Of a stretch of 64,000 bases of DNA, positions 1,502-18,850 are shown piece by piece. Below the pieces are notes generated by a model. It saw only the letters and a program-made list of their open reading frames with translations. It was not told where the DNA came from and made no database searches. A program made the position numbers and the translations under genes. This stretch comes from Paragordius varius (lineage: Eukaryota; Animalia; Nematomorpha): the NCBI GenBank assembly GCA_964247055.1, contig OZ176053.1, positions 3,782,001 to 3,846,000 of the forward strand, in the 5' to 3' direction. Position 1 is the first letter of the stretch; each line of letters begins with the position of its first letter.

Positions 1502-2793
1502 TTAAGTGCAATATAACGACAAATAATTAGCCTCATGCAGATACTTATACAATAAATCGATTGACCAATGTTTGCGCGTTATACCAAAATATTTTAATAC
1601 CATTTTTTACAAAATGGGCATATTTGGATATTAACCAATATTTGGCAATATGTTTTACCGTATTTTTTAAATCTATTAATCACACTTAAAATTTTTGAAT
1701 TAATATTTCTGAGTGGAAAAAAATTTATCCATGCAAGGCTATTTTTAAGACCGCATGCCCATGGGCCGCGATTTGAGTATCACTGAAAAGGTTTTAGTAT
1801 ATTTTGACCGAAATTTTATGAATTAATTTCATATTAGCGGTTTTTTCAATGAACTGTAAAAGTTGTTTTTATATTTTAGTCAATTATTTTTACTATATTT
1901 TCATAAATATAGAAACAGTTCAAAATGTCTTGCTTTTATATACCATGAAATAAAATGGTAAACATCTTAATATAAAGACAAAATCAAATAATGACTATTA
2001 AAAGTCTCATGAAATGGTAAAAAATTTTCTTCTAAGTTTTGCCCAAGATGATGTTGACTTTTTATTTAATCGCCAAAAATATTGGCATAAAAAAATATAT
2101 TATATTAAAATTATTCTCAATTTTTAATATCATCATTTTTTGATAGATATGAGATTTGGACGTCCATGATAGGGTGTAATATTTATAAAATAAAATTTTT
2201 ATTAATACTAGTTTTATCAAAGATTTCTTCATCCCAACCCCCGACGCAACTAGCCCGTTGTCTCTGAACAATCATTCACTGCTATGGAATGCGGCAAGGA
2301 GCGTGTGGGCGACGTGGGTTTGCCACACCCTTCTATTGATACACCTTGATATTCCTAAATAACTAAATATACATATTTTAAATTTTTTTTGGTAACTACC
2401 CCAAAAAGGGGGTGGTAACTTTGCTCCTTACCGCAGCTGTCTACATAGGACTACTCTTACCCCCTTACTAGGCTTTTACACCCCTCAAAGCTGGGAAAAA
2501 TCGTTTCATTCTTTAGGGCTTCCAACAAATATATGCAATGAAACGTACAATAGTAATTACATACGCAAAATGAAACTTATTTACATACGAGGCGCAAACT
2601 TAATGATAATAATCAGAGATAAAATCTAAAAAGAATGACAAATATCAAACGAGTGTCTACAAAATTAATCATCAAAATTATATCATAAAAAATCTTATTA
2701 AATTGCGCTGACAACAAAAACTATTAAATAGCGAGAAAGCGATTTTAGTTACGCTTATAGGATTTCACATGCATATAAACTTATGATGTAGGC

Positions 2794-4231
2794 ATGACAT
2801 TTCGCTACAATACCAAAGTAACGATATTGGACAAACCTGTGTCCAAACTTCGTTATGATGTAGTTTATGTGTGTAACAATATAGATTTCATCATCGACAT
2901 TTTACCTTTTATTTTCAGAAATTATACAATATCATTTAAATAGGTCTAATTCTATATCAGAGCTTCAGCAAAGGTTTTTACCCTAATTATTAAAGATTAG
3001 CCGAAAATGGATACAGAGTCGGACAAAGATATTTGGAGTTAATATTTTTACGAGACAAGCAGTTTAAAAGGGAAATAAAACTAGTTAACATTCTTTTGTA
3101 TATAAAAAATGTTATATGGAAGGTATATAGTGATTCTATAATTTTAGCAATTATTTGATAAAGAGGCAGAAAAATTGGAACATGCCAATGATGCCGAAAA
3201 TATTTGTAATTATATTAAATATTTCTCACAGATTATATAATTGAAAATGAAAATTATGTTAACAAGTATATATCCGTACCAAAAGACAAAGGAAATTTAA
3301 ACTGTGTCTATTTTGTCGCTGGTCTACTTCAAGCGATTTTGGTTGGATGCAATTTTGTGAGTTTTTTAATCATTTTTTTAAATTTTAAATTTTAGTTTCT
3401 GATTTTATTTTTTGTGCACATTTTTGATTATGGAAATAATAGCAAAATAAAATGTTAAACCGTCTTTTGCAACTATAGCATATGAGATAAGGATTTTCTC
3501 CAAAAAAGAATGAAATTAACACTTGGATACAACACACTCAATTTAGTCCTTGGATTCAAATTAAGGTAGCTGGATACCCCAGCCCTGTTTTAAATGAAAT
3601 ACTTTAAAAAGTATGGAAGGAATCGAAACCATGGCAAAATTTTGCACTTATATAACATTAGTAAACCGAATATAAAAAATTTTATTCATATAAATACTTG
3701 ATATTACTTATTTTAAAACCGAAAGGTAATTTCGTCAACGTGACATGTGTGAAATGGTAAAATTAAAAATAATACGAAATAAACCGCTTTTTCTATCTCT
3801 ATCAATGTCAGATGTAATTTAAATAGAAAATTAGCTTTAATTTTACCCTTAAAATTAAATGAGGACGATATTTTGCAAAGAAAGTTTAAAATAAAAATGG
3901 CATCGAAGTAGTTTGACATGGAACTTTTTTTTCAAAACAAAATTTTATTTAAATATTTTGGCATATTTATATAATTCTTAGGATGGAAGCATAAATTTTA
4001 ATTGGGACCGTTTCCTTCAAGAGTTTTTTAAAAATATTAATTTAAATTTAGTCTGGGGTATTTAGATACCCCAATTTGAATCGAAGTGCTAAAAGAAGAA
4101 TAATTATAATATATATCGCAATAGAATGTAGCTATCTCGCATGTATCAAATTCAATTACGGTTAGTTAAAACATCCAAATTAATAAAAATTGATTTGAAA
4201 ATTAAACCCAATTAATATAATTTTAACCCCC

Positions 4232-7105: not shown

Positions 7106-10100
7106 TTAAGATATAATGGCACGAGATGCTTTTCCAGGTTGCAAAAGGCATTCGGTACTAAGGCATTTACGTTTTTCAATCATTTCATGGGTAAGTTTGT
7201 AGGGTATATCGTTTTCAAAGCGGGATATAGCCTATGTCATGTAAAAATCAACCGTAAATTATTCGAAATAAAATAAATTCCAACGATTTCCAAATAATAT
7301 TTATTATATATTAGTAATACCTCAAGTTTTCGAGCCCTTTTCATATCCAATAACTTTGTTCGACTCAGCATTTCATTATTTTCGGCCAACAAACGCAATT
7401 CAAAATAATACTTTGCGTATACGCTGGAAGGTACATTTATGTTGAATTGCAATAATTCTAAAAATTCTTTCTCCAATTCATTTCTATGAGAGTTTCAAAA
7501 TAAAAAAACAATTAATGCTAAATATTATTAGCATTAAGGCATGCGATTGATAAAAAAATCACAACAACAGTTGGTGTTTGACAACACTTTTCTATTGGTC
7601 AAAAATTGCATTGATTTATTCACAAGACTGTATTTAAACTATTTTTTAAAAAAATGCTATATTTTTGTCGTTGAATAATTTTTTAATTAATAATTTTTCC
7701 CATATATAAACATGTATAAACACACTTTTATAACGCTCACAATTGTTTTTGGGGACAATAAAAAAAATTTGCTTTTAAAATAAAAAAATGTATTATACAC
7801 GTCATCCACCGGAACTTCCTTTAAAATTTGGCAATAATCAACATTCCAAACAGCTTGGTCATCCCAAACCTTAGAGGCCAAAATAATGGCACCCAATACA
7901 ATGCGTCTCCATGTGTTTGGTTTTAGTATTATATCTTCGGCATATGTTAATAAACGTTCCAAATATACCTGAAACACAGTATTAAATAAAATATATCTAC
8001 CAAAAAAACAGAAAAGAATTTTTGATAAAAACTATTAAATATACAAGAAAACACTATTTAACTATTAAATAAATGAATGCCAACGCCGTTTTTGCTTAAA
8101 TTGATTTTTAAGAGTCCTAAAACAAAAAAAAACATATCTGTTTTCATGTTTATATTAATTATTGCTGCAATATATGGTTGATATTATAAAATTATAAAAA
8201 TTTATTTTTCTCTTAAAATTTAATAAATTTTTTATTTGATTTAATAAATAAATGTATTACCAAAGTTATGACAGCACATTCGGCAGTAAGTTGAGCATTT
8301 GTAAATAAATTTCGTAAAAATTTGTAGATTGTTTTGAAATCCGGATCTTTTATATCCCCGGAGTCACCATATTTATCTTTCTGTATATGATTATGATTGA
8401 TTTTATAAAATATACATGATAGTTGTTAAATATTAATACACCAAAAAATATTATAGCATCAAAATTGAAATAGTCTAAAATAATTAAATGGTTAAATGTT
8501 GCATAATATAATAACTGTAAAATAATATGTATTTACTCCAATCGTTTTCATAAATAATAACAAAAAATTATTTTTCGCCTCATCTAAATTTAAAATATCA
8601 TTTTTGGATTTTGGTAATATTGACCAAACTTAATTTTATCGCGAATGCAGTAGACCCCACCCTCCAAAAACCCCAATTGTGTGGGAAATACATGGTCGCC
8701 ATCTGCATTTTTTGAATTTGCTTAAATTTCAATTATTGTCAATATTACTCCATTGATATGTTACTAAATAAAAACATTTTGAAATCATTTTTTGTTATTT
8801 GGCTTATTGTCAGACTATAACAATGACATATAGGTACGTTTGTAGAAAGTACACTTACATACAATTAAAAACTAAAAGACTTACAGTCATGTCTATATAG
8901 AATTGTCTTTTTTTTTTATTTAAATGATTATAATTTTTTTTTAATTGTTTTGATGTTTGATATGTCAACTTTCAACATGCGCATTTTTAAGCCTTAAAAT
9001 AATAGTAGCCTATTTATTGTAAGAATTTTTAATTTATAATTAAAAGATGTTGCAAAATATTATTCTTGAACATTTTATCTACAACATGCGCATGTAATTT
9101 ATGATAACCAAGTTTAATATATGTTTTCATTTTCTAGGGGTTTTTAACATGCACTTAAAATATATAAGAAAACCCAAGCAGATGTCCATTTAATCTCTAT
9201 ATATATAAAGAAATAAATCATAAATCTAGAGTTATTTTAAAAAATTATGAATATCAACGATAACCCATTATTTCTTCTTTGCTCGGCAGCTAGTGTACTT
9301 GAAGGTTTATATTAAAAAATAAAAATTCAGAACAAAATCCAATATTAAAATCAATATGATAAAAAACCCCGGTGTAGTACCCCTCTAGAGCAACATAATA
9401 AAATTGCAAGACTTTGCGAAGAGAGAAGGGAAAAAAATCTAAAAAATTATTATAATTTTTCTTCACATATTTTGTTGGAATGTATGCAAAGAAAACCCCT
9501 AGAAAATGAAAACAATTATAAATTTATTTAAATATTATAATCAATAAATATTTTTATCTTTTAAATTATATTTTGGTTATGTGTGTTTAAACTTTATTAA
9601 TAAAATTTTATAATTAATATTTTACAAAAGATAAAAATTACAATATGCGCATGTTGTGCATCAAGAATAATATTTTGCAATATCTTTTATAATTATAAAT
9701 TAAAAATTCTTACAATAAATAGGCTACTATTATTTTAAGGCTTAAAAATGCGCATGTTGAAAGTTGACATATCAAACATCAAAACAATTAAAAAAAAATT
9801 ATAATCATTTAAATAAAAAAAAAAGACAATTCTATATAGACATGACTGTAAGTGAATTATGATTTTCTTAGTATGAGGGAATCATTATAGCGGGCTTATA
9901 TTTAAACATAAACAAATAAATACAGTAATTAAATAAAAGCATTTTTAAAATTACCAACCCTCAAAGTCAAATAGAATTAGGCCAAAAAACAAATTGTAAA
10001 AGTGTAGTTAAATTATAATAATAGGTAAATTTTTAACAAATTATTAAATCATACATTTAAGGGATGTACTTTCTCATCAAAAATTTGACTGTTGTTTGTT

Positions 10101-10957
10101 CCTGTGCTGGAATATGATTTATGCATTTGTTTAAGTGTAGTACAACGGCAAGGTGATTGTTTATTCTGATCACTGCTCATTTTTTCCATATTTGTCGGTT
10201 GATCATTAGATAATTTTAAATTATGGGTAGAACTATTAGATAATGTGTTTTGCAAAGATTCTGAACTTTCCAAAAACTTTGTCAACTGTAAGTGTCGTTT
10301 AGAATATGGATCCAGTATTCTTTCATTTTTGGGCTCAGATTGTATGTGATATAATATGGCTAATGCTAAACTCTTCACAACCATCTTCAGATTTGGTTGA
10401 GAAACAGTACAGTCATCAATAAAAATGGTGGATGTGGAATTACAACGAACAATAGAATTTTTAAAGCGACGAGATCTTATATCATTTACAACTGATGATT
10501 TGGAAGAACTGTTGGAAGGTTTAATCAAAAAATCAGCATCGCCATCTGCAATTAAATATTGGAGTAAACCTGATATTTTATTCCCATCATAGTGGCGACT
10601 ATACGATTCGCTTTTCTTTAACTACTATTTATTTATATATTTACTTGACGTCTTTTGGATATCACAATACCTAAACATTAATTTTTAAAAACAACTTTTA
10701 TCACTCCCACATTTGGATATGAAAAGGGGCCCAGTAATTGGGTTTGATGATGGATCTTTATATATATCTAAATTTAATATTAGAATACCATCGGGTTCCC
10801 GTTCACTAATGTGCTGAATATGGATATAATCTAATTTTTTAAAGTTTCCATCCTTTAATGTTTTACCGCGTCGTTTAACATTTAGACACAAACCTTTATA
10901 CGCCTTATTTTTAGATTCTGGATCTGGTTGAACAAAGCAACACAACTTATTACCCAT
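7106..10957 (-). CDS. CCNY: Cyclin Y / cyclin Y-like, about 450-460 aa
   Basis: Exons (minus): 10957-10789, 10755-10711, 10670-10645, 10621-10055, 8380-8261, 7968-7799, 7483-7321, 7231-7106 (TAA). Motifs: MGNKLCC (myristoylation/palmitoylation-type N-terminus), [110 protein letters not shown]-terminal AIIS. The cyclin-box exons are secure; N-terminal splice choices are less certain. Confidence 0.95.
8884..9848. mobile_element. Tc1/mariner-like non-autonomous foldback element (965 bp) in a cyclin Y intron
   Basis: TA(8882-83)-CAGTCATGTCTATATAGAATTG...CAATTCTATATAGACATGACTG-TA(9849-50). The arms are near-perfect reverse complements for ~185 bp (8884-~9069 vs ~9661-9848), with further patchy matches inward (e.g. 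GTTTTCATTTTCTAGGGGTTTT ~9123 vs ~9492). No coding capacity. Confidence 0.85.
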
Positions 10958-11542: not shown

Positions 11543-12121
11543 CACTTCGATTCAAATTGGGGTATCTAAATACCCCAGACTAAATTTGAATTAGCATTTT
11601 TAAAAAACTACTGAAGGAAACGGTCCCAATTTAATTTATGCTTCTATCCTAATACAAATTATATAAATATGTTAAAATATCTAAATAAAATTTTGTTTTG
11701 AAAAAAAAGTTCCATGTCAAATTACTTCGACGCCATTTTTATTTTAGAAACCTTTTGCAAAATATCGTCCTCATTTAATTTTGTGGGTAAAATTAAAGCT
11801 AATTTTTTATATAAATTACATCTAACATTGATAGAAATAGAAAAAGCGGTTTATTTTGTATTCTTTTTTAATTTTACAATTTGACACATGTCACGTTGAC
11901 GAAATTTTTGCCTTTCGGTTTTAGCTTGAAATAAGTAATATCAAGTATTTTTGAATAAAATTTTTTATATATTTCGGTTTATTAGTTATATAAGTGCAAA
12001 ATTTTGCCATGGTTTCGATTCCTTCCATACTTTTTAAAGTATTAAATTTTAAACAGGCCTAAGGTATTTAACTACCCCAATTTGAATCGAAGGACTAAAA
12101 TGAATGTATTGTATCCAAGTG
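11543..12121 (+). mobile_element. piggyBac-like MITE, family A (579 bp)
   Basis: TTAA-CACTTCGATTCAAATTGGGGTAT...TTGTATCCAAGTG-TTAA; perfect TTAA at 11539-11542 and 12122-12125. Confidence 0.9.
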
Positions 12122-14389: not shown

Positions 14390-14717
14390 TGTTAATTGGT
14401 TATAACCTTAAGTTATATTATTAATTTATTATATAATTTATATGATATTGTATGTACAAGTATTCTAATTATAGTTGCCAACTTTAACCTTAAGTTAAAT
14501 TATACGACATTGTATTTAATAAGTAATCTAATGACTATTATATATATGGATATTTTATATGACATTGTATTTGATACAAATAGTATTCTAATTTATTATT
14601 GTAATTTATCCTTGCTAAAATATATAAATACACCTATACCAACACTGAGCAATCAGTTAATAAATGTACTTAATTTGAGTTATTAATTCATATGTCGTCT
14701 CTATTCTAAACGCATTA
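14390..14717 (+). repeat. 5' LTR (328 bp), TGTTA...CATTA
   Basis: Matches 18519-18850 except for two 2-bp indels and one C/T substitution seen by eye. TATA-like TATATAAATA at 14621-14630; AATAAA at 14659-14664. Confidence 0.95.
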
Positions 14718-14718
14718 T

Positions 14719-14732
14719 TGGTACCGTTAATG
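14719..14732 (+). promoter_or_regulatory. Putative primer-binding site TGGTACCGTTAATG
   Basis: TGG begins 1 nt after the 5' LTR, as expected for complementarity to a tRNA CCA end. The cognate tRNA was not identified. Confidence 0.55.
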
Positions 14733-17700
14733 GACGAAATTTCCAAAATCAGTATTAACGAATACGATCCAAACACTAATTTTAAACAATACTTAAAGCA
14801 CGTGAATCGTATCTTAATCGCTAAAAACATTAATCCAAATGATGAAATATTAAAAAACTTATTCCTGGCCTATGCAGGACTACGCACAATCTCTAAACTG
14901 GAAAACCAAGCGTTTCCTACGAAAATAGAGGAGATGACATGGGCTCAAATTCAAAAATTGGCAATGCAAATCTTTGCCCCGGACAAAAGCATATGGCTGA
15001 GTCGTGAAGAATTCTTTAAAACAACCAGACAAGAAGGCGAACCAATCATGAGTTATATGGAAAGATTAAAAGTACTAGCTGACGATTGTGATTTTGAAGG
15101 CAATATCTCATACTTATTAAGAGATGTTTTCTTGATAGGACTAAATATGCTAATCCTAGAACGGGAATTACATATAAGATTCCCCACGGGTCAAAATGAA
15201 GGCGAACCAGTGTTACAAATGGTAATTGATATGGCGCATTCCCTCGAAGTGATTGAACCGAAGGTGCTGAAAATCCGCCAAGAAAGAACCATACACCAAA
15301 GAGACTGCCAAAGATGTGGGAAATGTCATGCAATCGATAAATGCAGTGCAAAGAGTCAACGATGCTATAAGTGCGGAAAATACAACCATTTTGCAAAGTA
15401 TTGCCGAACCAAATATCCCACCAAACCAGGTATTCGGGCAGTGACAAATTCAACGGGGATGGGCCCAACGATAACAGTGCAACTTAACGGAATAGAAACA
15501 TCAATGTTGTTTGACACCGGTGCGGATGTGACAGTTATCAATGAGAGATACTGGAAATCAACAGGACAACCACGACTGGAGGTAGGACAAAGACTATCCA
15601 CATACAATAATGAAACTATCCCAACCATGGGTAAAACAGAATTGCGCGTAACAATAAACGGTATGACAAAAACCCTTGAATGTTTTGTAACCGAGGGAGA
15701 TCGGCCATTAATTTTTGGTCTCCCTTGGATCCGTGCATTTGCTTTAAATTTACCAGATAATGTGATGATCAATAATATAACTAATAAATCTATATATAAC
15801 CAGTATAATAGGTTGTTCTCGGACGGGTTAGGCTGTCTTAAGGATATGGAGGTATCGATTGCGATAAAAAATAATGCAACACCCAAAATATACCCCTGCA
15901 AGAGAGTTCCCCTACCCCTCCAAGAACGTGTGGAAAAGGAACTAGATAGATTGATAAACCTAGGTATCTTGAGAAAAATTGACCCAAATAGGGAGCGAAT
16001 ATCGTGGGCCACACCAACAGTAAATATATTAAAACCAAATGGCCAAAAAGGATATGTGCGGATTTTCGAATCAGCCTCAATCCTCATTTGCTACCCGATT
16101 CCCACGTAATCCCCACCTTTGATGAACTAATCTCAAGAACAGCTCAAGGGACAGTTTTTACGTCACTAGACCTGAAGGATGCTTACCTGCAAATTCCCAT
16201 AAAACAATCATCACAACCACTACTGACCATAACTACCCATCAAGGTTTTTATTGTTACCAACGACTTCCATTTGGGTTGACTACGGCCCCTCATATATTT
16301 CAACGAATCATGGATAATTTGATTGGTGATATACCAGGTATATGTATCTATTTAGATGACATATTAATATCAGGTAAAACAAGAACCGAACATGACGCCA
16401 CATTGACCAGGGTATTGCAACGATTGGAAGCTGCAGGGTTGAAACTGAGCAGAGACAAATTGCAACTTGCCGTTTCATCTGTCAATTACATGGGATATGA
16501 ATTTCAAAGAATGGAATTCGTCCCACCAATGACAAAATTCAAGCTTTGATCAATTGTCCGAGACCCACCAATAAGACAGAACTAAGATCATTTTTAGGAC
16601 TGCTAAACTTTCATGAACGATTCATACCAAATCTCCATCAAGCGATATGCAACCTCCACAGAAACACAGGTTCAATTAGACCATGGGCCTGGACCGAGAT
16701 AGAAGAAGAGGAGTTCCAATCCGCAAAACAACTAAATAAATTACAATACATTAATACCGTTTAACCCAAATTGGCCAATACTAATAGAAACAGACGCATC
16801 AAACAAGGGATTTGGAGCGATCTTACTACATATTACCCCGGAATGAAAGCGTCCCATATCATACGCTTCACGCAAATGCACCGATGCCGAAACCAATTAT
16901 TCAACAATAGAGAAAGAAGCAAAAGCTATCACGTATGCTATAGAAAAATTTAAACCATTTATATATGGTAGAAAATTCAAAATTATAACCGACCACAAAC
17001 CACTAATCGGGTTATTTGGTCGAACTCGAAATTTACAAAATATTAATAATGCTAAACTTCTTAGATGGATCTATAAAACATCGGGATACGACTATGAAAT
17101 CGAATATAAAAAAGGGCAAAACAACTTAGCCGACGCTCTATCCAGATTACCAAATAATGATAATACCATGGAGGTGCATAATGAAGATGATGAGGTATCA
17201 CACACGGTAAAATTTTTAACTATGAATAAATTTAATCTAAGTAAAGAGTTAGTGGAGGAGGAGATAAGGTTAGATCCATTGGCAAACAAACTTAAATCAG
17301 CAATAAGAACAAATGATTGGAGTGATCCAAGTATAAAGGAATTTCTGAAAGTAAAAAATGAGATTCAAATATACTATAATCTTTTATTTGTAAATGACAG
17401 ATTACTAATACCTACATCCTTGCAGCGGGACGTAATGAAATTCCTACATACTGGACATAACGGAGCGCAATCGATGAAACAACAAGCAAGACAATCCATA
17501 TATTGGCCAAACTTAGAAAAAGATTTAGAAAATTTTGTAGAAATATGTGAACCGTGTCAAAGAAACAAGCCTAATATAAAGGAAAATCCAAAGTGGAAAT
17601 GGAATTTCAACACCGCGTTGTGGGAGAGAATTCACATCGACATAGCCGGCCCCATAGATGGTTATTTTTGGTTAGTTACCATTGATAGCGCTTCAAGATG

Positions 17701-18518
17701 GGTTGAGGTGGATCTACTCAAATCGATAACCTCACAACAATTATTGAATTGTTCAGAAAAACACATGGCCAGAGGTTTTCCGAGACAGATAGTCACTGAT
17801 AATGGGCCATACTTTACATCCCATGAATTCAGAAGTACCTTACATAATCTTAATATAAAACATTTTAGTGAGTCCATACCATCCCAAGTCCAATGGATTG
17901 GTTGAAAGTATTGCAACCCTCAAATTCAGATATAGAGCTACGAAAACGCAAACAATGCATGCCCACGAGGCAATCAACACGATTTTATATGGCTATCGAA
18001 ATTCAACACACAGTGCCATCATGAATACACCATCACAAGTCTTTCTGAAGAGACACCCAAATGGTCCGATGTCATGGCTAAAAACACAAACAACTGAGTT
18101 TATCGATAATGAAATAGAACCGACTCGCCAGTTTGTTCCAAGAGAGAAGGTTTTTATAAAAAATGAAATAGAAAAAGGATGGAGGGCAGGGGAAATATTA
18201 GAACGCCGGGGTCCATTATCATATATGGTAACAGACGAAACAGACAGAGTTCTTAGAAAACACGCTGATCAATTAAAACAAAGAATGGAATGTCCGAGAA
18301 CAACCACGCCAGCGCCCGAAACACCAATTAATTCCGAAGAATATACCTCTACTCCACCAGATCTCGAAGCCATAAACAATAATATACAACCATCGCCGAT
18401 AGGCATAACCACACAGGATAATAACGTAGCTCCAACAACGAATATAGACATGCCTAAACCCAGGTACCCACAACGCCAGCGAAAACCCCCAGACCGCTTT
18501 ACTATAGGGGGAAGATAA
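14730..18518 (+). pseudogene. gag-pol polyprotein, broken by four frameshifts and one in-frame TGA
   Basis: Gag zinc knuckles CQRCGKCHAIDKC and CYKCGKYNHFAKYC; protease LFDTGADVTVI; RT RICADFR, LDLKDAY, YLDDIL; RNase H ETDAS, YSTIEKEAKAI, TDHKPL, ADALSR; integrase HTGH..CEPC, IHIDIAGP, VTDNGPYF, SPYHPKSNGLVE. Frame breaks near 16046, 16501, 16735 and 17860; TGA at 16844-16846. Confidence 0.93.
18506..18515 (+). promoter_or_regulatory. Polypurine tract AGGGGGAAGA
   Basis: Ends 3 nt upstream of the 3' LTR start. Confidence 0.8.
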
Positions 18519-18850
18519 TGTTAATTGGTTATAACCTTAAGTTATATTATTATTATTTATTATATAATTTATATGACATTGTATGTACAAGTATTCTAAT
18601 TATAGTTGCCAACTTTATAACCTTAAGTTAAATTATACGACATTGTATTTAATAAGTAATCTAATGACTATTATATATATGGATATTTTATATGACATTG
18701 TATTTGATACAAATAGTATTCTAATTTATTATTGTAATTTATCCTTGCTAAAATATATAAATACACCTATACCAACACTGAGCAATCAGTTAATAAATGT
18801 ACTTAATTTGAGTTATTAATTCATATGTCGTCTCTATTCTAAACGCATTA
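18519..18850 (+). repeat. 3' LTR (332 bp)
   Basis: Direct repeat of 14390-14717, followed immediately by the TSD GTAAT. Confidence 0.95.

What the first reader, a model, noticed from the sequence alone, without database searches (positions are those of the whole stretch)
2860..3231. Obligate 22-26 nt spliceosomal introns in TRAPPC5
Four consecutive introns are 25, 22, 25 and 26 nt (2860-2884, 2974-2995, 3123-3147, 3206-3231). None is a multiple of 3 and recognisable TRAPPC5 sequence lies on both sides, so all must be removed. This is far below usual animal intron sizes and near the Paramecium range, yet the standard genetic code and the cyclin Y/RTE/gypsy content suggest an animal. Reduced lineages such as dicyemids, orthonectids or myxozoans are candidates (inference). 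No branch-point or polypyrimidine consensus is evident beyond an AT-rich run and a terminal AG, which points to a spliceosome that can work with very little space. The lack of 3n lengths fits NMD-linked selection, but n is tiny.
Basis: partly seen in the sequence, partly recalled or inferred. Interest (0 to 1): 0.75.

Follow-up and report, generated by a model that had tools for sequence, protein, structure and literature searches.

The report
Tiny 22-26-base introns in TRAPPC5
An ordinary housekeeping gene of an AT-rich animal genome, whose nearest available relative is a horsehair worm, can be read only if 22-26-base pieces are spliced out; introns this short are published for just two other animal groups, and I could get no RNA to show the cutting.

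Summary
Window 2794-3458 (+) is the single-copy TRAPPC5/Trs31 gene. Removing exactly these lets exons 2-5 align without a gap to zebrafish TRAPPC5 residues 24-156 and to consecutive Pfam TRAPP positions. A fifth intron (39 nt) is probable, and a sixth (25 nt) is possible.

The host is an animal, but not a dicyemid, orthonectid or myxozoan. An L2HGDH tree puts it next to the horsehair worm Gordionus (support 100/99).

The same short class (22-31 nt) occurs in BiP, 14-3-3, CCT6, DHODH and NDUFA9 in other DNA of this genome. There it sits at the 5' end of genes, ahead of introns of 69 nt to about 1 kb. U1, U2 and U6 snRNAs, SF1 and a U2AF65-like gene are present.

I found no RNA, so splicing itself is inferred.

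Introns under 30 nt are published only for myxobolid myxozoans and Dicyema, so this is a new member of a known kind. Earlier agents of this scan reported the same class many times in other windows of this genome.

The parts
2794..2859 (+). TRAPPC5 exon 1 (22 codons, start ATG 2794-2796)
   Evidence: First ATG after an in-frame TAA at 2776-2778. Exon 2's own frame is closed just upstream by the acceptor's TAG, so translation must enter from this exon. The peptide is too divergent for a PDB hit.
2860..2884 (+). Intron 1, 25 nt, GT-AG, phase 0 (an alternative donor at 2863 would make it 22 nt)
   Evidence: A 3n+1 removal is needed to join the exon 1 and exon 2 frames.
2885..2973 (+). TRAPPC5 exon 2
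   Evidence: Pfam TRAPP positions 1-23. Zebrafish TRAPPC5 2j3w_B residues 24-51.
2974..2995 (+). Intron 2, 22 nt, GT-AG, phase 2
   Evidence: Removal makes chain residues 52-54 continuous. Retention gives a stop 10 nt after the donor.
2996..3122 (+). TRAPPC5 exon 3
   Evidence: Pfam TRAPP positions 26-66, E 4e-7. 2j3w_B residues 54-95 and Drosophila 7b6d_F residues 63-101.
3123..3147 (+). Intron 3, 25 nt, GT-AG, phase 0
   Evidence: The flanking exons map to consecutive TRAPPC5 residues.
3148..3205 (+). TRAPPC5 exon 4 (19 codons plus 1 nt)
   Evidence: Fills chain residues 96-114 and Pfam positions 67-84 exactly. It is too short to search on its own.
3206..3231 (+). Intron 4, 26 nt, GT-AG, phase 1
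   Evidence: The split codon TAT (Tyr) matches residue 115 of zebrafish TRAPPC5, a Tyr directly before the YIIE motif.
3232..3356 (+). TRAPPC5 exon 5
   Evidence: Pfam TRAPP positions 85-129. 7b6d_F residues 122-162, E 8e-12, and 2j3w_B residues 116-154.
3357..3395 (+). Intron 5, 39 nt, GT-AG, phase 0; a multiple of 3 that ends in an in-frame TAG (probable)
   Evidence: Read-through stops at the intron's last codon. Splicing continues the frame for 20 more codons. The downstream peptide has no significant TRAPPC5 hit.
3396..3458 (+). TRAPPC5 exon 6 with stop TAA 3456-3458. Alternatively it ends at 3453, followed by a possible sixth intron 3454-3478 (25 nt) and a last exon 3479-3513.
   Evidence: Frame arithmetic. 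The alternative gives a C-terminus nearer in length to orthologues, but 10 extra codons cannot be tested.

Best explanation
Window 2794-3458 (+) is the single-copy TRAPPC5/Trs31 gene of an AT-rich ecdysozoan. Its closest sequenced relative in the databases is the horsehair worm Gordionus. The 175-codon reading frame is split by five GT-AG introns (possibly six) of 25 (or 22), 22, 25, 26 and 39 nt.

These are ordinary U2-type spliceosomal introns that have shrunk to a lineage-specific minimum of about 22 nt. They belong to a class of 22-31 nt introns, with a tail to about 45 nt. In this genome the class sits within roughly the first 0.6 kb of genes. Introns further downstream run from 69 nt to about 1 kb.

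Recognition probably rests on four things:
- a reduced 5' site (GTA, T at +6);
- an interior of about 89% A+T;
- a short T run followed by YAG at the 3' end;
- an A somewhere 7-12 nt before the AG that acts as the branch point.

Shown here: the boundaries, the need for removal, the same class in other genes, the placement of the host, and the presence of U1, U2, U6, SF1 and a U2AF65-like gene.

Inferred: that the RNA is in fact cut there, the branch point, and the 5'-proximity rule.
For: - Exact GT-AG boundaries, with exon peptides mapping without a gap to TRAPPC5 residues 24-156 and to consecutive Pfam positions.
- Every retained intron gives a premature stop.
- The gene is single-copy.
- The same class occurs elsewhere in the genome:
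  - BiP: 23 and 28 nt, then 69 nt.
  - 14-3-3: 22 nt. A paralogue on contig 2 is exactly 22 nt shorter between the flanking anchors.
  - CCT6: 23 and 23 nt, with Pfam positions 18-38 and 39-97 abutting.
  - DHODH: 22 and 31 nt.
  - NDUFA9: 30 and 28 nt.
- In a splice-aware scan of 220 kb, 22-26 nt GT-AG introns numbered 8, against 0-3 (mean 1.6) for five control dinucleotide pairs.
- Host placement.
- Spliceosome parts found: at least 35 U2 copies, at least 8 U1, 2 U6, SF1 and a collinear U2AF65-like gene.
Against: - No RNA evidence. No same-species protein or transcript turned up in two protein searches, and an exon-level search found nothing.
- No orthologous TRAPPC5 locus from a relative could be fetched, so I do not know whether these intron positions are conserved.
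- The intron 1 donor is ambiguous. Intron 5 and the last exon lack homology support.
- ORF-only and codon-score-only scans showed no excess over controls.
- The NDUFA9 junctions, the DHODH 22-nt junction and the first CCT6 junction were judged against orthologue sequences recalled from memory, not fetched.
Confidence: 0.88

Rival explanations
1. The segments are not removed. The locus is a decaying pseudogene or carries assembly errors, and the apparent exons are remnants.
For: No transcript evidence was available. The C-terminal exon has no detectable homology.
Against: Five of five interruptions have GT-AG ends. The spliced frame has no internal stop over 175 codons. Exons 2-5 are collinear with TRAPPC5 without any indel. 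It is the only TRAPPC5 copy in the genome. Identical-looking interruptions occur in essential genes such as BiP and CCT6.
Confidence: 0.03
2. The segments are removed by a route other than the spliceosome. Candidates are precise DNA elimination as with ciliate IESs, IRE1-type unconventional splicing as for the 23-26 nt XBP1 intron, or translational bypass.
For: The sizes match those of ciliate IESs and of the XBP1 intron (own knowledge). No lariat or junction data are available.
Against: The ends are GT...AG, not the TA of ciliate IESs. The 5' GTA and the 3' T-run plus YAG are splice-site-like. A full major-spliceosome toolkit is present. The class is spread over many unrelated genes.
Confidence: 0.03
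3. The true introns are longer or different: some of the small 'exons' are skipped, or other splice sites are used.
For: Alternative in-frame GT or AG pairs exist near several junctions. Examples are the donor at 2863 and acceptors at 3000 and 3016.
Against: Any alternative other than the 2863 donor deletes or inserts residues in a stretch that otherwise aligns without a gap to zebrafish and Drosophila TRAPPC5 and to consecutive Pfam positions.
Confidence: 0.03
4. The host is a dicyemid, orthonectid or myxozoan. The introns would then simply be the already published ones.
For: Dicyema and myxobolids are the only animals published with introns under 30 nt (PMC13644364).
Against: L2HGDH is 70% identical to Gordionus against about 60% to all others. 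It groups with Gordionus at 100/99 inside an ecdysozoan clade, away from the three cnidarians. GC of about 27% matches the 26.9% reported for Gordionus montsenyensis. The genome also keeps kb-sized introns and many transposons. No dicyemid, orthonectid or myxozoan sequence was in the tree, so the exclusion is indirect.
Confidence: 0.03

Closest known systems
Ultra-short introns of myxobolid myxozoans (Hadjez et al. 2026, PMC13644364)
   Same: GT-AG introns of 22-27 nt in conserved genes. The 5' site is reduced to GTa. There are weak A residues upstream of the AG and no real polypyrimidine tract. U2 and U2AF are retained. The hosts are parasitic.
   Different: In myxobolids these are the bulk of introns (median 22-27 nt), in compact cnidarian genomes. 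Here they are a 5'-proximal subclass beside introns of 69 nt to about 1 kb, in a transposon-rich ecdysozoan genome of 110.6 Mb. A short T-run plus YAG is still visible at the 3' end.
Dicyema japonicum short introns (PMC6736024, and as discussed in PMC13644364)
   Same: Animal GT-AG introns under 30 nt with reduced splice-site motifs.
   Different: A different phylum (a spiralian), with genome-wide shortening. I did not read PMC6736024 in detail.
Ciliate tiny introns (Paramecium about 25 nt, Stentor 15-16 nt; own knowledge, Stentor also cited in PMC13644364)
   Same: The size range.
   Different: These are protists with uniformly tiny introns. Paramecium has a variant genetic code. Here the code is standard and long introns coexist.
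Nematode short introns (C. elegans, mode near 50 nt, UUUUCAG 3' site, no minor spliceosome; own knowledge)
   Same: The closest phylum. There is a T-run plus YAG at the 3' end, no clear branch-point consensus, and no U12 hit (absence is not proven).
   Different: The shortest nematode introns are about twice as long.
XBP1/HAC1 unconventional intron (23-26 nt, cut by IRE1; own knowledge)
   Same: The size.
   Different: It occurs in a single gene, has no GT-AG ends, and is defined by paired stem-loops.

Membership tests
U2-type GT-AG spliceosomal intron | GT at the 5' end and AG at the 3' end | tested here: met
   All five TRAPPC5 introns and nine more in other genes.
U2-type GT-AG spliceosomal intron | Removal restores a conserved, uninterrupted reading frame | tested here: met
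   Gapless mapping to TRAPPC5 residues 24-156, consecutive Pfam positions, and no internal stop.
U2-type GT-AG spliceosomal intron | Absent from mature mRNA, with a lariat formed at a branch-point A | not testable with these tools
   No RNA data for this species could be reached.
U2-type GT-AG spliceosomal intron | Major spliceosome components encoded in the genome | tested here: met
   U2, U1, U6, SF1 and a U2AF65-like gene.
Animal ultra-short intron class (myxobolid/Dicyema type) | Length under 30 nt | tested here: met
   22-26 nt in TRAPPC5. Twelve of the 14 collected introns are 30 nt or shorter, eleven of them under 30 nt.
Animal ultra-short intron class (myxobolid/Dicyema type) | 5' site reduced to GTa | tested here: met
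   GTA in 10/14 and G at +5 in only 2/14.
Animal ultra-short intron class (myxobolid/Dicyema type) | Short introns are the genome-wide norm (median under 30 nt) | tested here: not met
   CCT, HSP70, cyclin Y, NDUFA9 and Rft1 carry introns from 69 nt to about 1 kb. The sample is small.
Animal ultra-short intron class (myxobolid/Dicyema type) | Host is a myxozoan or a dicyemid | tested here: not met
   Sister to Gordionus (Nematomorpha) at 100/99.
TRAPPC5/Trs31 (Bet3-like TRAPP subunit, Pfam PF04051) | Match to PF04051 and best match to TRAPPC5 rather than TRAPPC3 or TRAPPC6 | tested here: met
   Exon-wise PF04051 hits. The only PDB hits are TRAPPC5 chains 7b6d_F, 2j3r_B and 2j3w_B. The joined protein was not searched.
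U12-type (minor spliceosome) intron | Extended 5' site and branch-site consensus, with U12 snRNA present | tested here: not met
   No such motifs in the introns and no U12 hit. The tool warns that a blank does not prove absence.
Ciliate-type IES or ciliate intron | TA-bounded element, or a ciliate host with a variant code | tested here: not met
   GT-AG ends, a standard code and an animal host.

The most novel reading that the evidence does not exclude
A horsehair-worm-like ecdysozoan would be a third, independent animal lineage with spliceosomal introns under 30 nt. Unlike in myxozoans and dicyemids, these are confined to the first few hundred bases of genes and coexist with transposon-filled introns of up to about a kilobase. 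The shrinkage would then depend on position in the gene, for example promoter- or cap-proximal, and would not be a by-product of genome compaction. Gene finders that forbid such introns would break genes like TRAPPC5. That could inflate the 'missing universal genes' reported for Nematomorpha.
Probability: 0.5. Interest if true: 0.72.

Novelty: new member of a known kind. Interest (0 to 1): 0.6.

Why it matters
Introns under 30 nt were long held to be absent from animals. A 2026 survey of 51 animal genomes found them only in myxobolid myxozoans and Dicyema, and linked them to parasitic genome reduction (PMC13644364).

A nematomorph-like genome of 110 Mb that is full of satellites and retrotransposons, yet splices 22-26 nt introns at gene 5' ends, would separate 'minimal intron' from 'compact genome'. 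It would also offer one organism in which the same spliceosome handles both extremes.

There is a practical side. A gene like TRAPPC5, with five or six such introns in 0.7 kb, is likely to be mis-modelled by pipelines with a minimum intron length of about 30-40 nt (own knowledge of common defaults, not checked here). That bears on the low BUSCO completeness (71.6% for Gordionus) and on the claims of gene loss in this phylum.

Tried and rejected
- **ORF-only scan.** I scanned 220 kb for GT..AG bridges against control dinucleotides. There was no excess. Adding codon scores and a first splice-aware dynamic programme gave at most a hint at 22-23 nt. Gene density here is too low and chance open frames too common. 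Only after adding an intron-composition term did the 22-26 nt bin stand out, at 8 against 0-3. That term was trained on introns already found, so the result is indicative only.
- **Gordionus gene structures.** Look-ups for the Gordionus 14-3-3 and L2HGDH found no record.
- **Exon 5 as a query for exon-sized fragments in relatives.** No candidates.
- **Retrocopy of TRAPPC5 as indirect proof of splicing.** None found.
- **PDB searches with exons 1 and 6.** Only spurious repeat-protein hits.
- **Piezo, Rft1 and cyclin Y junctions.** No tiny intron could be fixed without a reference protein.
- **GMP reductase.** The 22-nt junction is probable and the 19-nt one only possible. The Pfam positions leave a gap that I could not resolve.
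Not reproduced: 6 of 14.
- **The joined spliced protein.** Not sent to any search or folding tool. Exons were searched singly by reference. Joining was done only inside scripts, to count frames and stops.

Full report
**What is at the locus**

The window is AT-rich eukaryotic DNA, 23-37% GC in 2-kb windows and mostly 25-29%. It comes from contig 4 of a 110.56-Mb assembly in 44 contigs.

Reading 2300-3900 and checking frames gives this gene model on the + strand:
- exons 2794-2859, 2885-2973, 2996-3122, 3148-3205, 3232-3356 and 3396-3458;
- introns 2860-2884 (25 nt), 2974-2995 (22), 3123-3147 (25), 3206-3231 (26) and 3357-3395 (39).

All five begin with GT and end with AG. Their G+C is 10-28% (20% pooled, against 28% in the exons) and they are T-rich (48% T, against 34% in the exons).

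**Is removal really required?**

I searched the exons one by one, by reference.
- In Pfam, exon 2 matches TRAPP PF04051 positions 1-23, exon 3 matches 26-66 and exon 5 matches 85-129. The 19-codon exon 4 fits the 18 positions left between them.
- Against solved structures, the only hits are TRAPPC5 chains.
- On zebrafish TRAPPC5 (2j3w_B), exon 2 covers residues 24-51, exon 3 covers 54-95 and exon 5 covers 116-154.
- Drosophila TRAPPC5 (7b6d_F) gives E 8e-12 for exon 5.
- Counting the whole and split codons, the four exons tile residues 24-156 with no insertion or deletion. The codon split by intron 4 is TAT, matching the Tyr that precedes YIIE in the fish protein.

Retaining any single intron brings a stop 10-81 nt after the donor, and the unspliced frame stops at codon 50. 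Exon 2's frame is closed immediately upstream by the acceptor's own TAG, so it can be translated only through exon 1.

A second in-frame donor at 2863 would make intron 1 22 nt instead of 25.

Intron 5 (39 nt, a multiple of 3, ending in an in-frame TAG) is probable. A sixth intron of 25 nt at 3454-3478 would lengthen the C-terminus to a size nearer to orthologues. Neither terminal exon gives a significant hit, so these parts are inferred.

I did not send the joined protein to any search or fold. Joining was done only inside scripts, to count frames and stops.

The gene is single-copy and has no retrocopy.

**Whose genome is it?**

A 441-codon open frame in neighbouring DNA (L019) is L-2-hydroxyglutarate dehydrogenase. 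Its best hit is Gordionus sp. (Nematomorpha) at 70% identity over 97% of the query. All other named animals reach about 57-62%.

In a maximum-likelihood tree of 21 animals it is sister to Gordionus with support 100/99. The pair sits in a clade with a nematode and two mites (95/93), away from the three cnidarians.

The GC content matches the 26.93% published for Gordionus montsenyensis. The assembly is smaller than the 200-300 Mb quoted for published nematomorph genomes, so it is probably another species.

14-3-3 is too conserved to help.

The long open L2HGDH frame also shows that the genetic code is standard.

Its candidates (dicyemid, orthonectid, myxozoan) are not supported. This rests on one gene, and no member of those groups was in the tree.

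**Is this a class or a one-off?**

In the DNA that I could fetch (200 kb upstream of the window plus two HSP70 loci), the same kind of intron recurs:
- BiP-type HSP70: 23 and 28 nt, then 69 nt.
- 14-3-3: 22 nt.
- CCT6: 23 and 23 nt. The second junction joins Pfam positions 18-38 and 39-97 exactly.
- DHODH: 22 and 31 nt.
- NDUFA9: 30 and 28 nt (I judged these junctions against a human sequence recalled from memory).
- Probably GMP reductase and a USP: 22 nt each.

A 14-3-3 paralogue on contig 2 is exactly 22 nt shorter between anchors on either side of the intron. This is independent evidence that the 22 nt are not coding.

A splice-aware scan of 220 kb found 8 GT-AG introns of 22-26 nt, against 0-3 (mean 1.6) for five control dinucleotide pairs. 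Simpler scans showed nothing, and the successful one used a composition term learnt from known cases, so it is only indicative.

**Two classes and a 5' polarity**

The same genome has ordinary introns:
- about 400-700 nt in a CCT gene on contig 1;
- 89 nt to about 2 kb in the cyclin Y gene that lies on the other strand of this window;
- 91 or 106 nt in Rft1.

In BiP, CCT6, NDUFA9, DHODH and GMP reductase, every tiny intron precedes every long one. All tiny introns lie within about 0.6 kb of the start codon. TRAPPC5, at only 0.7 kb long, is tiny throughout. The number of genes is small, but the pattern agrees with earlier notes of this scan.

**Signals**

I aligned 14 short introns.
- The 5' end is GTA in 10, with T at +6 in 11 and G at +5 in only 2.
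- The 3' end has T at -5 and -6 in 10-11 and a pyrimidine at -3 in 13.
- The interior is 37% A, 51% T, 6% C and 5% G.
- A-rich motifs of the TAAT or TAAAT type lie 7-14 nt before the AG in most of them, but no position is fixed.
- Two of the 14 lengths are multiples of 3, which is too few cases to test the NMD idea.

**Spliceosome**

The genome holds at least 35 U2 copies above the Rfam threshold, at least 8 U1 and 2 U6. It also holds one SF1 helix-hairpin hit and a collinear multi-exon match to the U2AF large subunit on contig 8. No U12 was found, and the tool warns that this does not prove absence.

**Literature**

Hadjez et al. 2026 (PMC13644364) report introns under 30 nt only in myxobolid myxozoans and Dicyema among 51 animal genomes. 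Their main text does not mention nematomorphs.

The two nematomorph genome papers held in the library never use the word 'intron'. Searches for hairworm or Nematomorpha together with intron terms found nothing relevant. The Current Biology nematomorph genome paper is not in the library, so prior mention there cannot be excluded.

**Verdict**

The four introns are real features and almost certainly spliceosomal. The host inference was wrong in its detail.

The phenomenon is a new member of a known kind, with an unusual 5'-polarised two-class layout. Direct RNA proof is missing. The scan had already reported the same class many times in other windows of this genome.

Noticed in passing
window 20427-64000: A 62-bp satellite fills the rest of the window. 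It has about 705 copies at 90% match and a strong C-over-G skew of about -0.4. It is interrupted at roughly 42.5-43.5 kb by a reverse-transcriptase fragment (Pfam RVT_1).
   Followed up: partly
window 14680-18520: A Ty3/gypsy-type LTR retrotransposon. Its gag, aspartic protease, RT and integrase domains are spread over several separate open frames. I only observed it.
   Followed up: partly
window 7118-10957 (- strand): A cyclin Y gene (starts MGNKLCC) with ordinary introns of 89 nt to about 2 kb lies next to TRAPPC5. Both intron classes therefore occur within 8 kb of each other.
   Followed up: partly
window 3713-3919 (-), 11714-11884 (+), about 12540 and about 13449: Several copies of a short repeated element (MITE-like) whose chance ORFs give nearly identical peptides. 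One copy lies just downstream of TRAPPC5.
   Followed up: no
G000 C2:13882898-13883491: A 14-3-3 paralogue with 75-85% DNA identity to the contig-4 gene. It lacks exactly the 22 nt that form that gene's tiny intron.
   Followed up: partly
L024 5522-5951, L025 5447-6029, L015 2637-3382, L004 1190-2620: In CCT6, NDUFA9, DHODH and BiP the first two introns found are 22-31 nt. All later introns run from 69 nt to about 1 kb, a 5'-to-3' polarity of intron size.
   Followed up: partly
L014 3612-3630: A possible 19-nt GT-AG intron in GMP reductase. It would be the shortest seen here. The Pfam positions leave a gap, so it is unproven.
   Followed up: partly
G000 C3:257000-527000 and other sites: An unusually large and graded U2 snRNA family: 46 matches, of which 35 exceed the Rfam threshold, from 178 down to 47 bits. 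Many are clustered on contig 3.
   Followed up: no
G000 C4:1872539-1873015: Another TRAPP-family gene (Bet3- or TRAPPC6-like) covers the whole Pfam domain in one 220-codon open frame. Not every small gene carries tiny introns.
   Followed up: no
G000 whole genome: No U12 snRNA match, as in nematodes. The tool's warning means absence is not shown.
   Followed up: no
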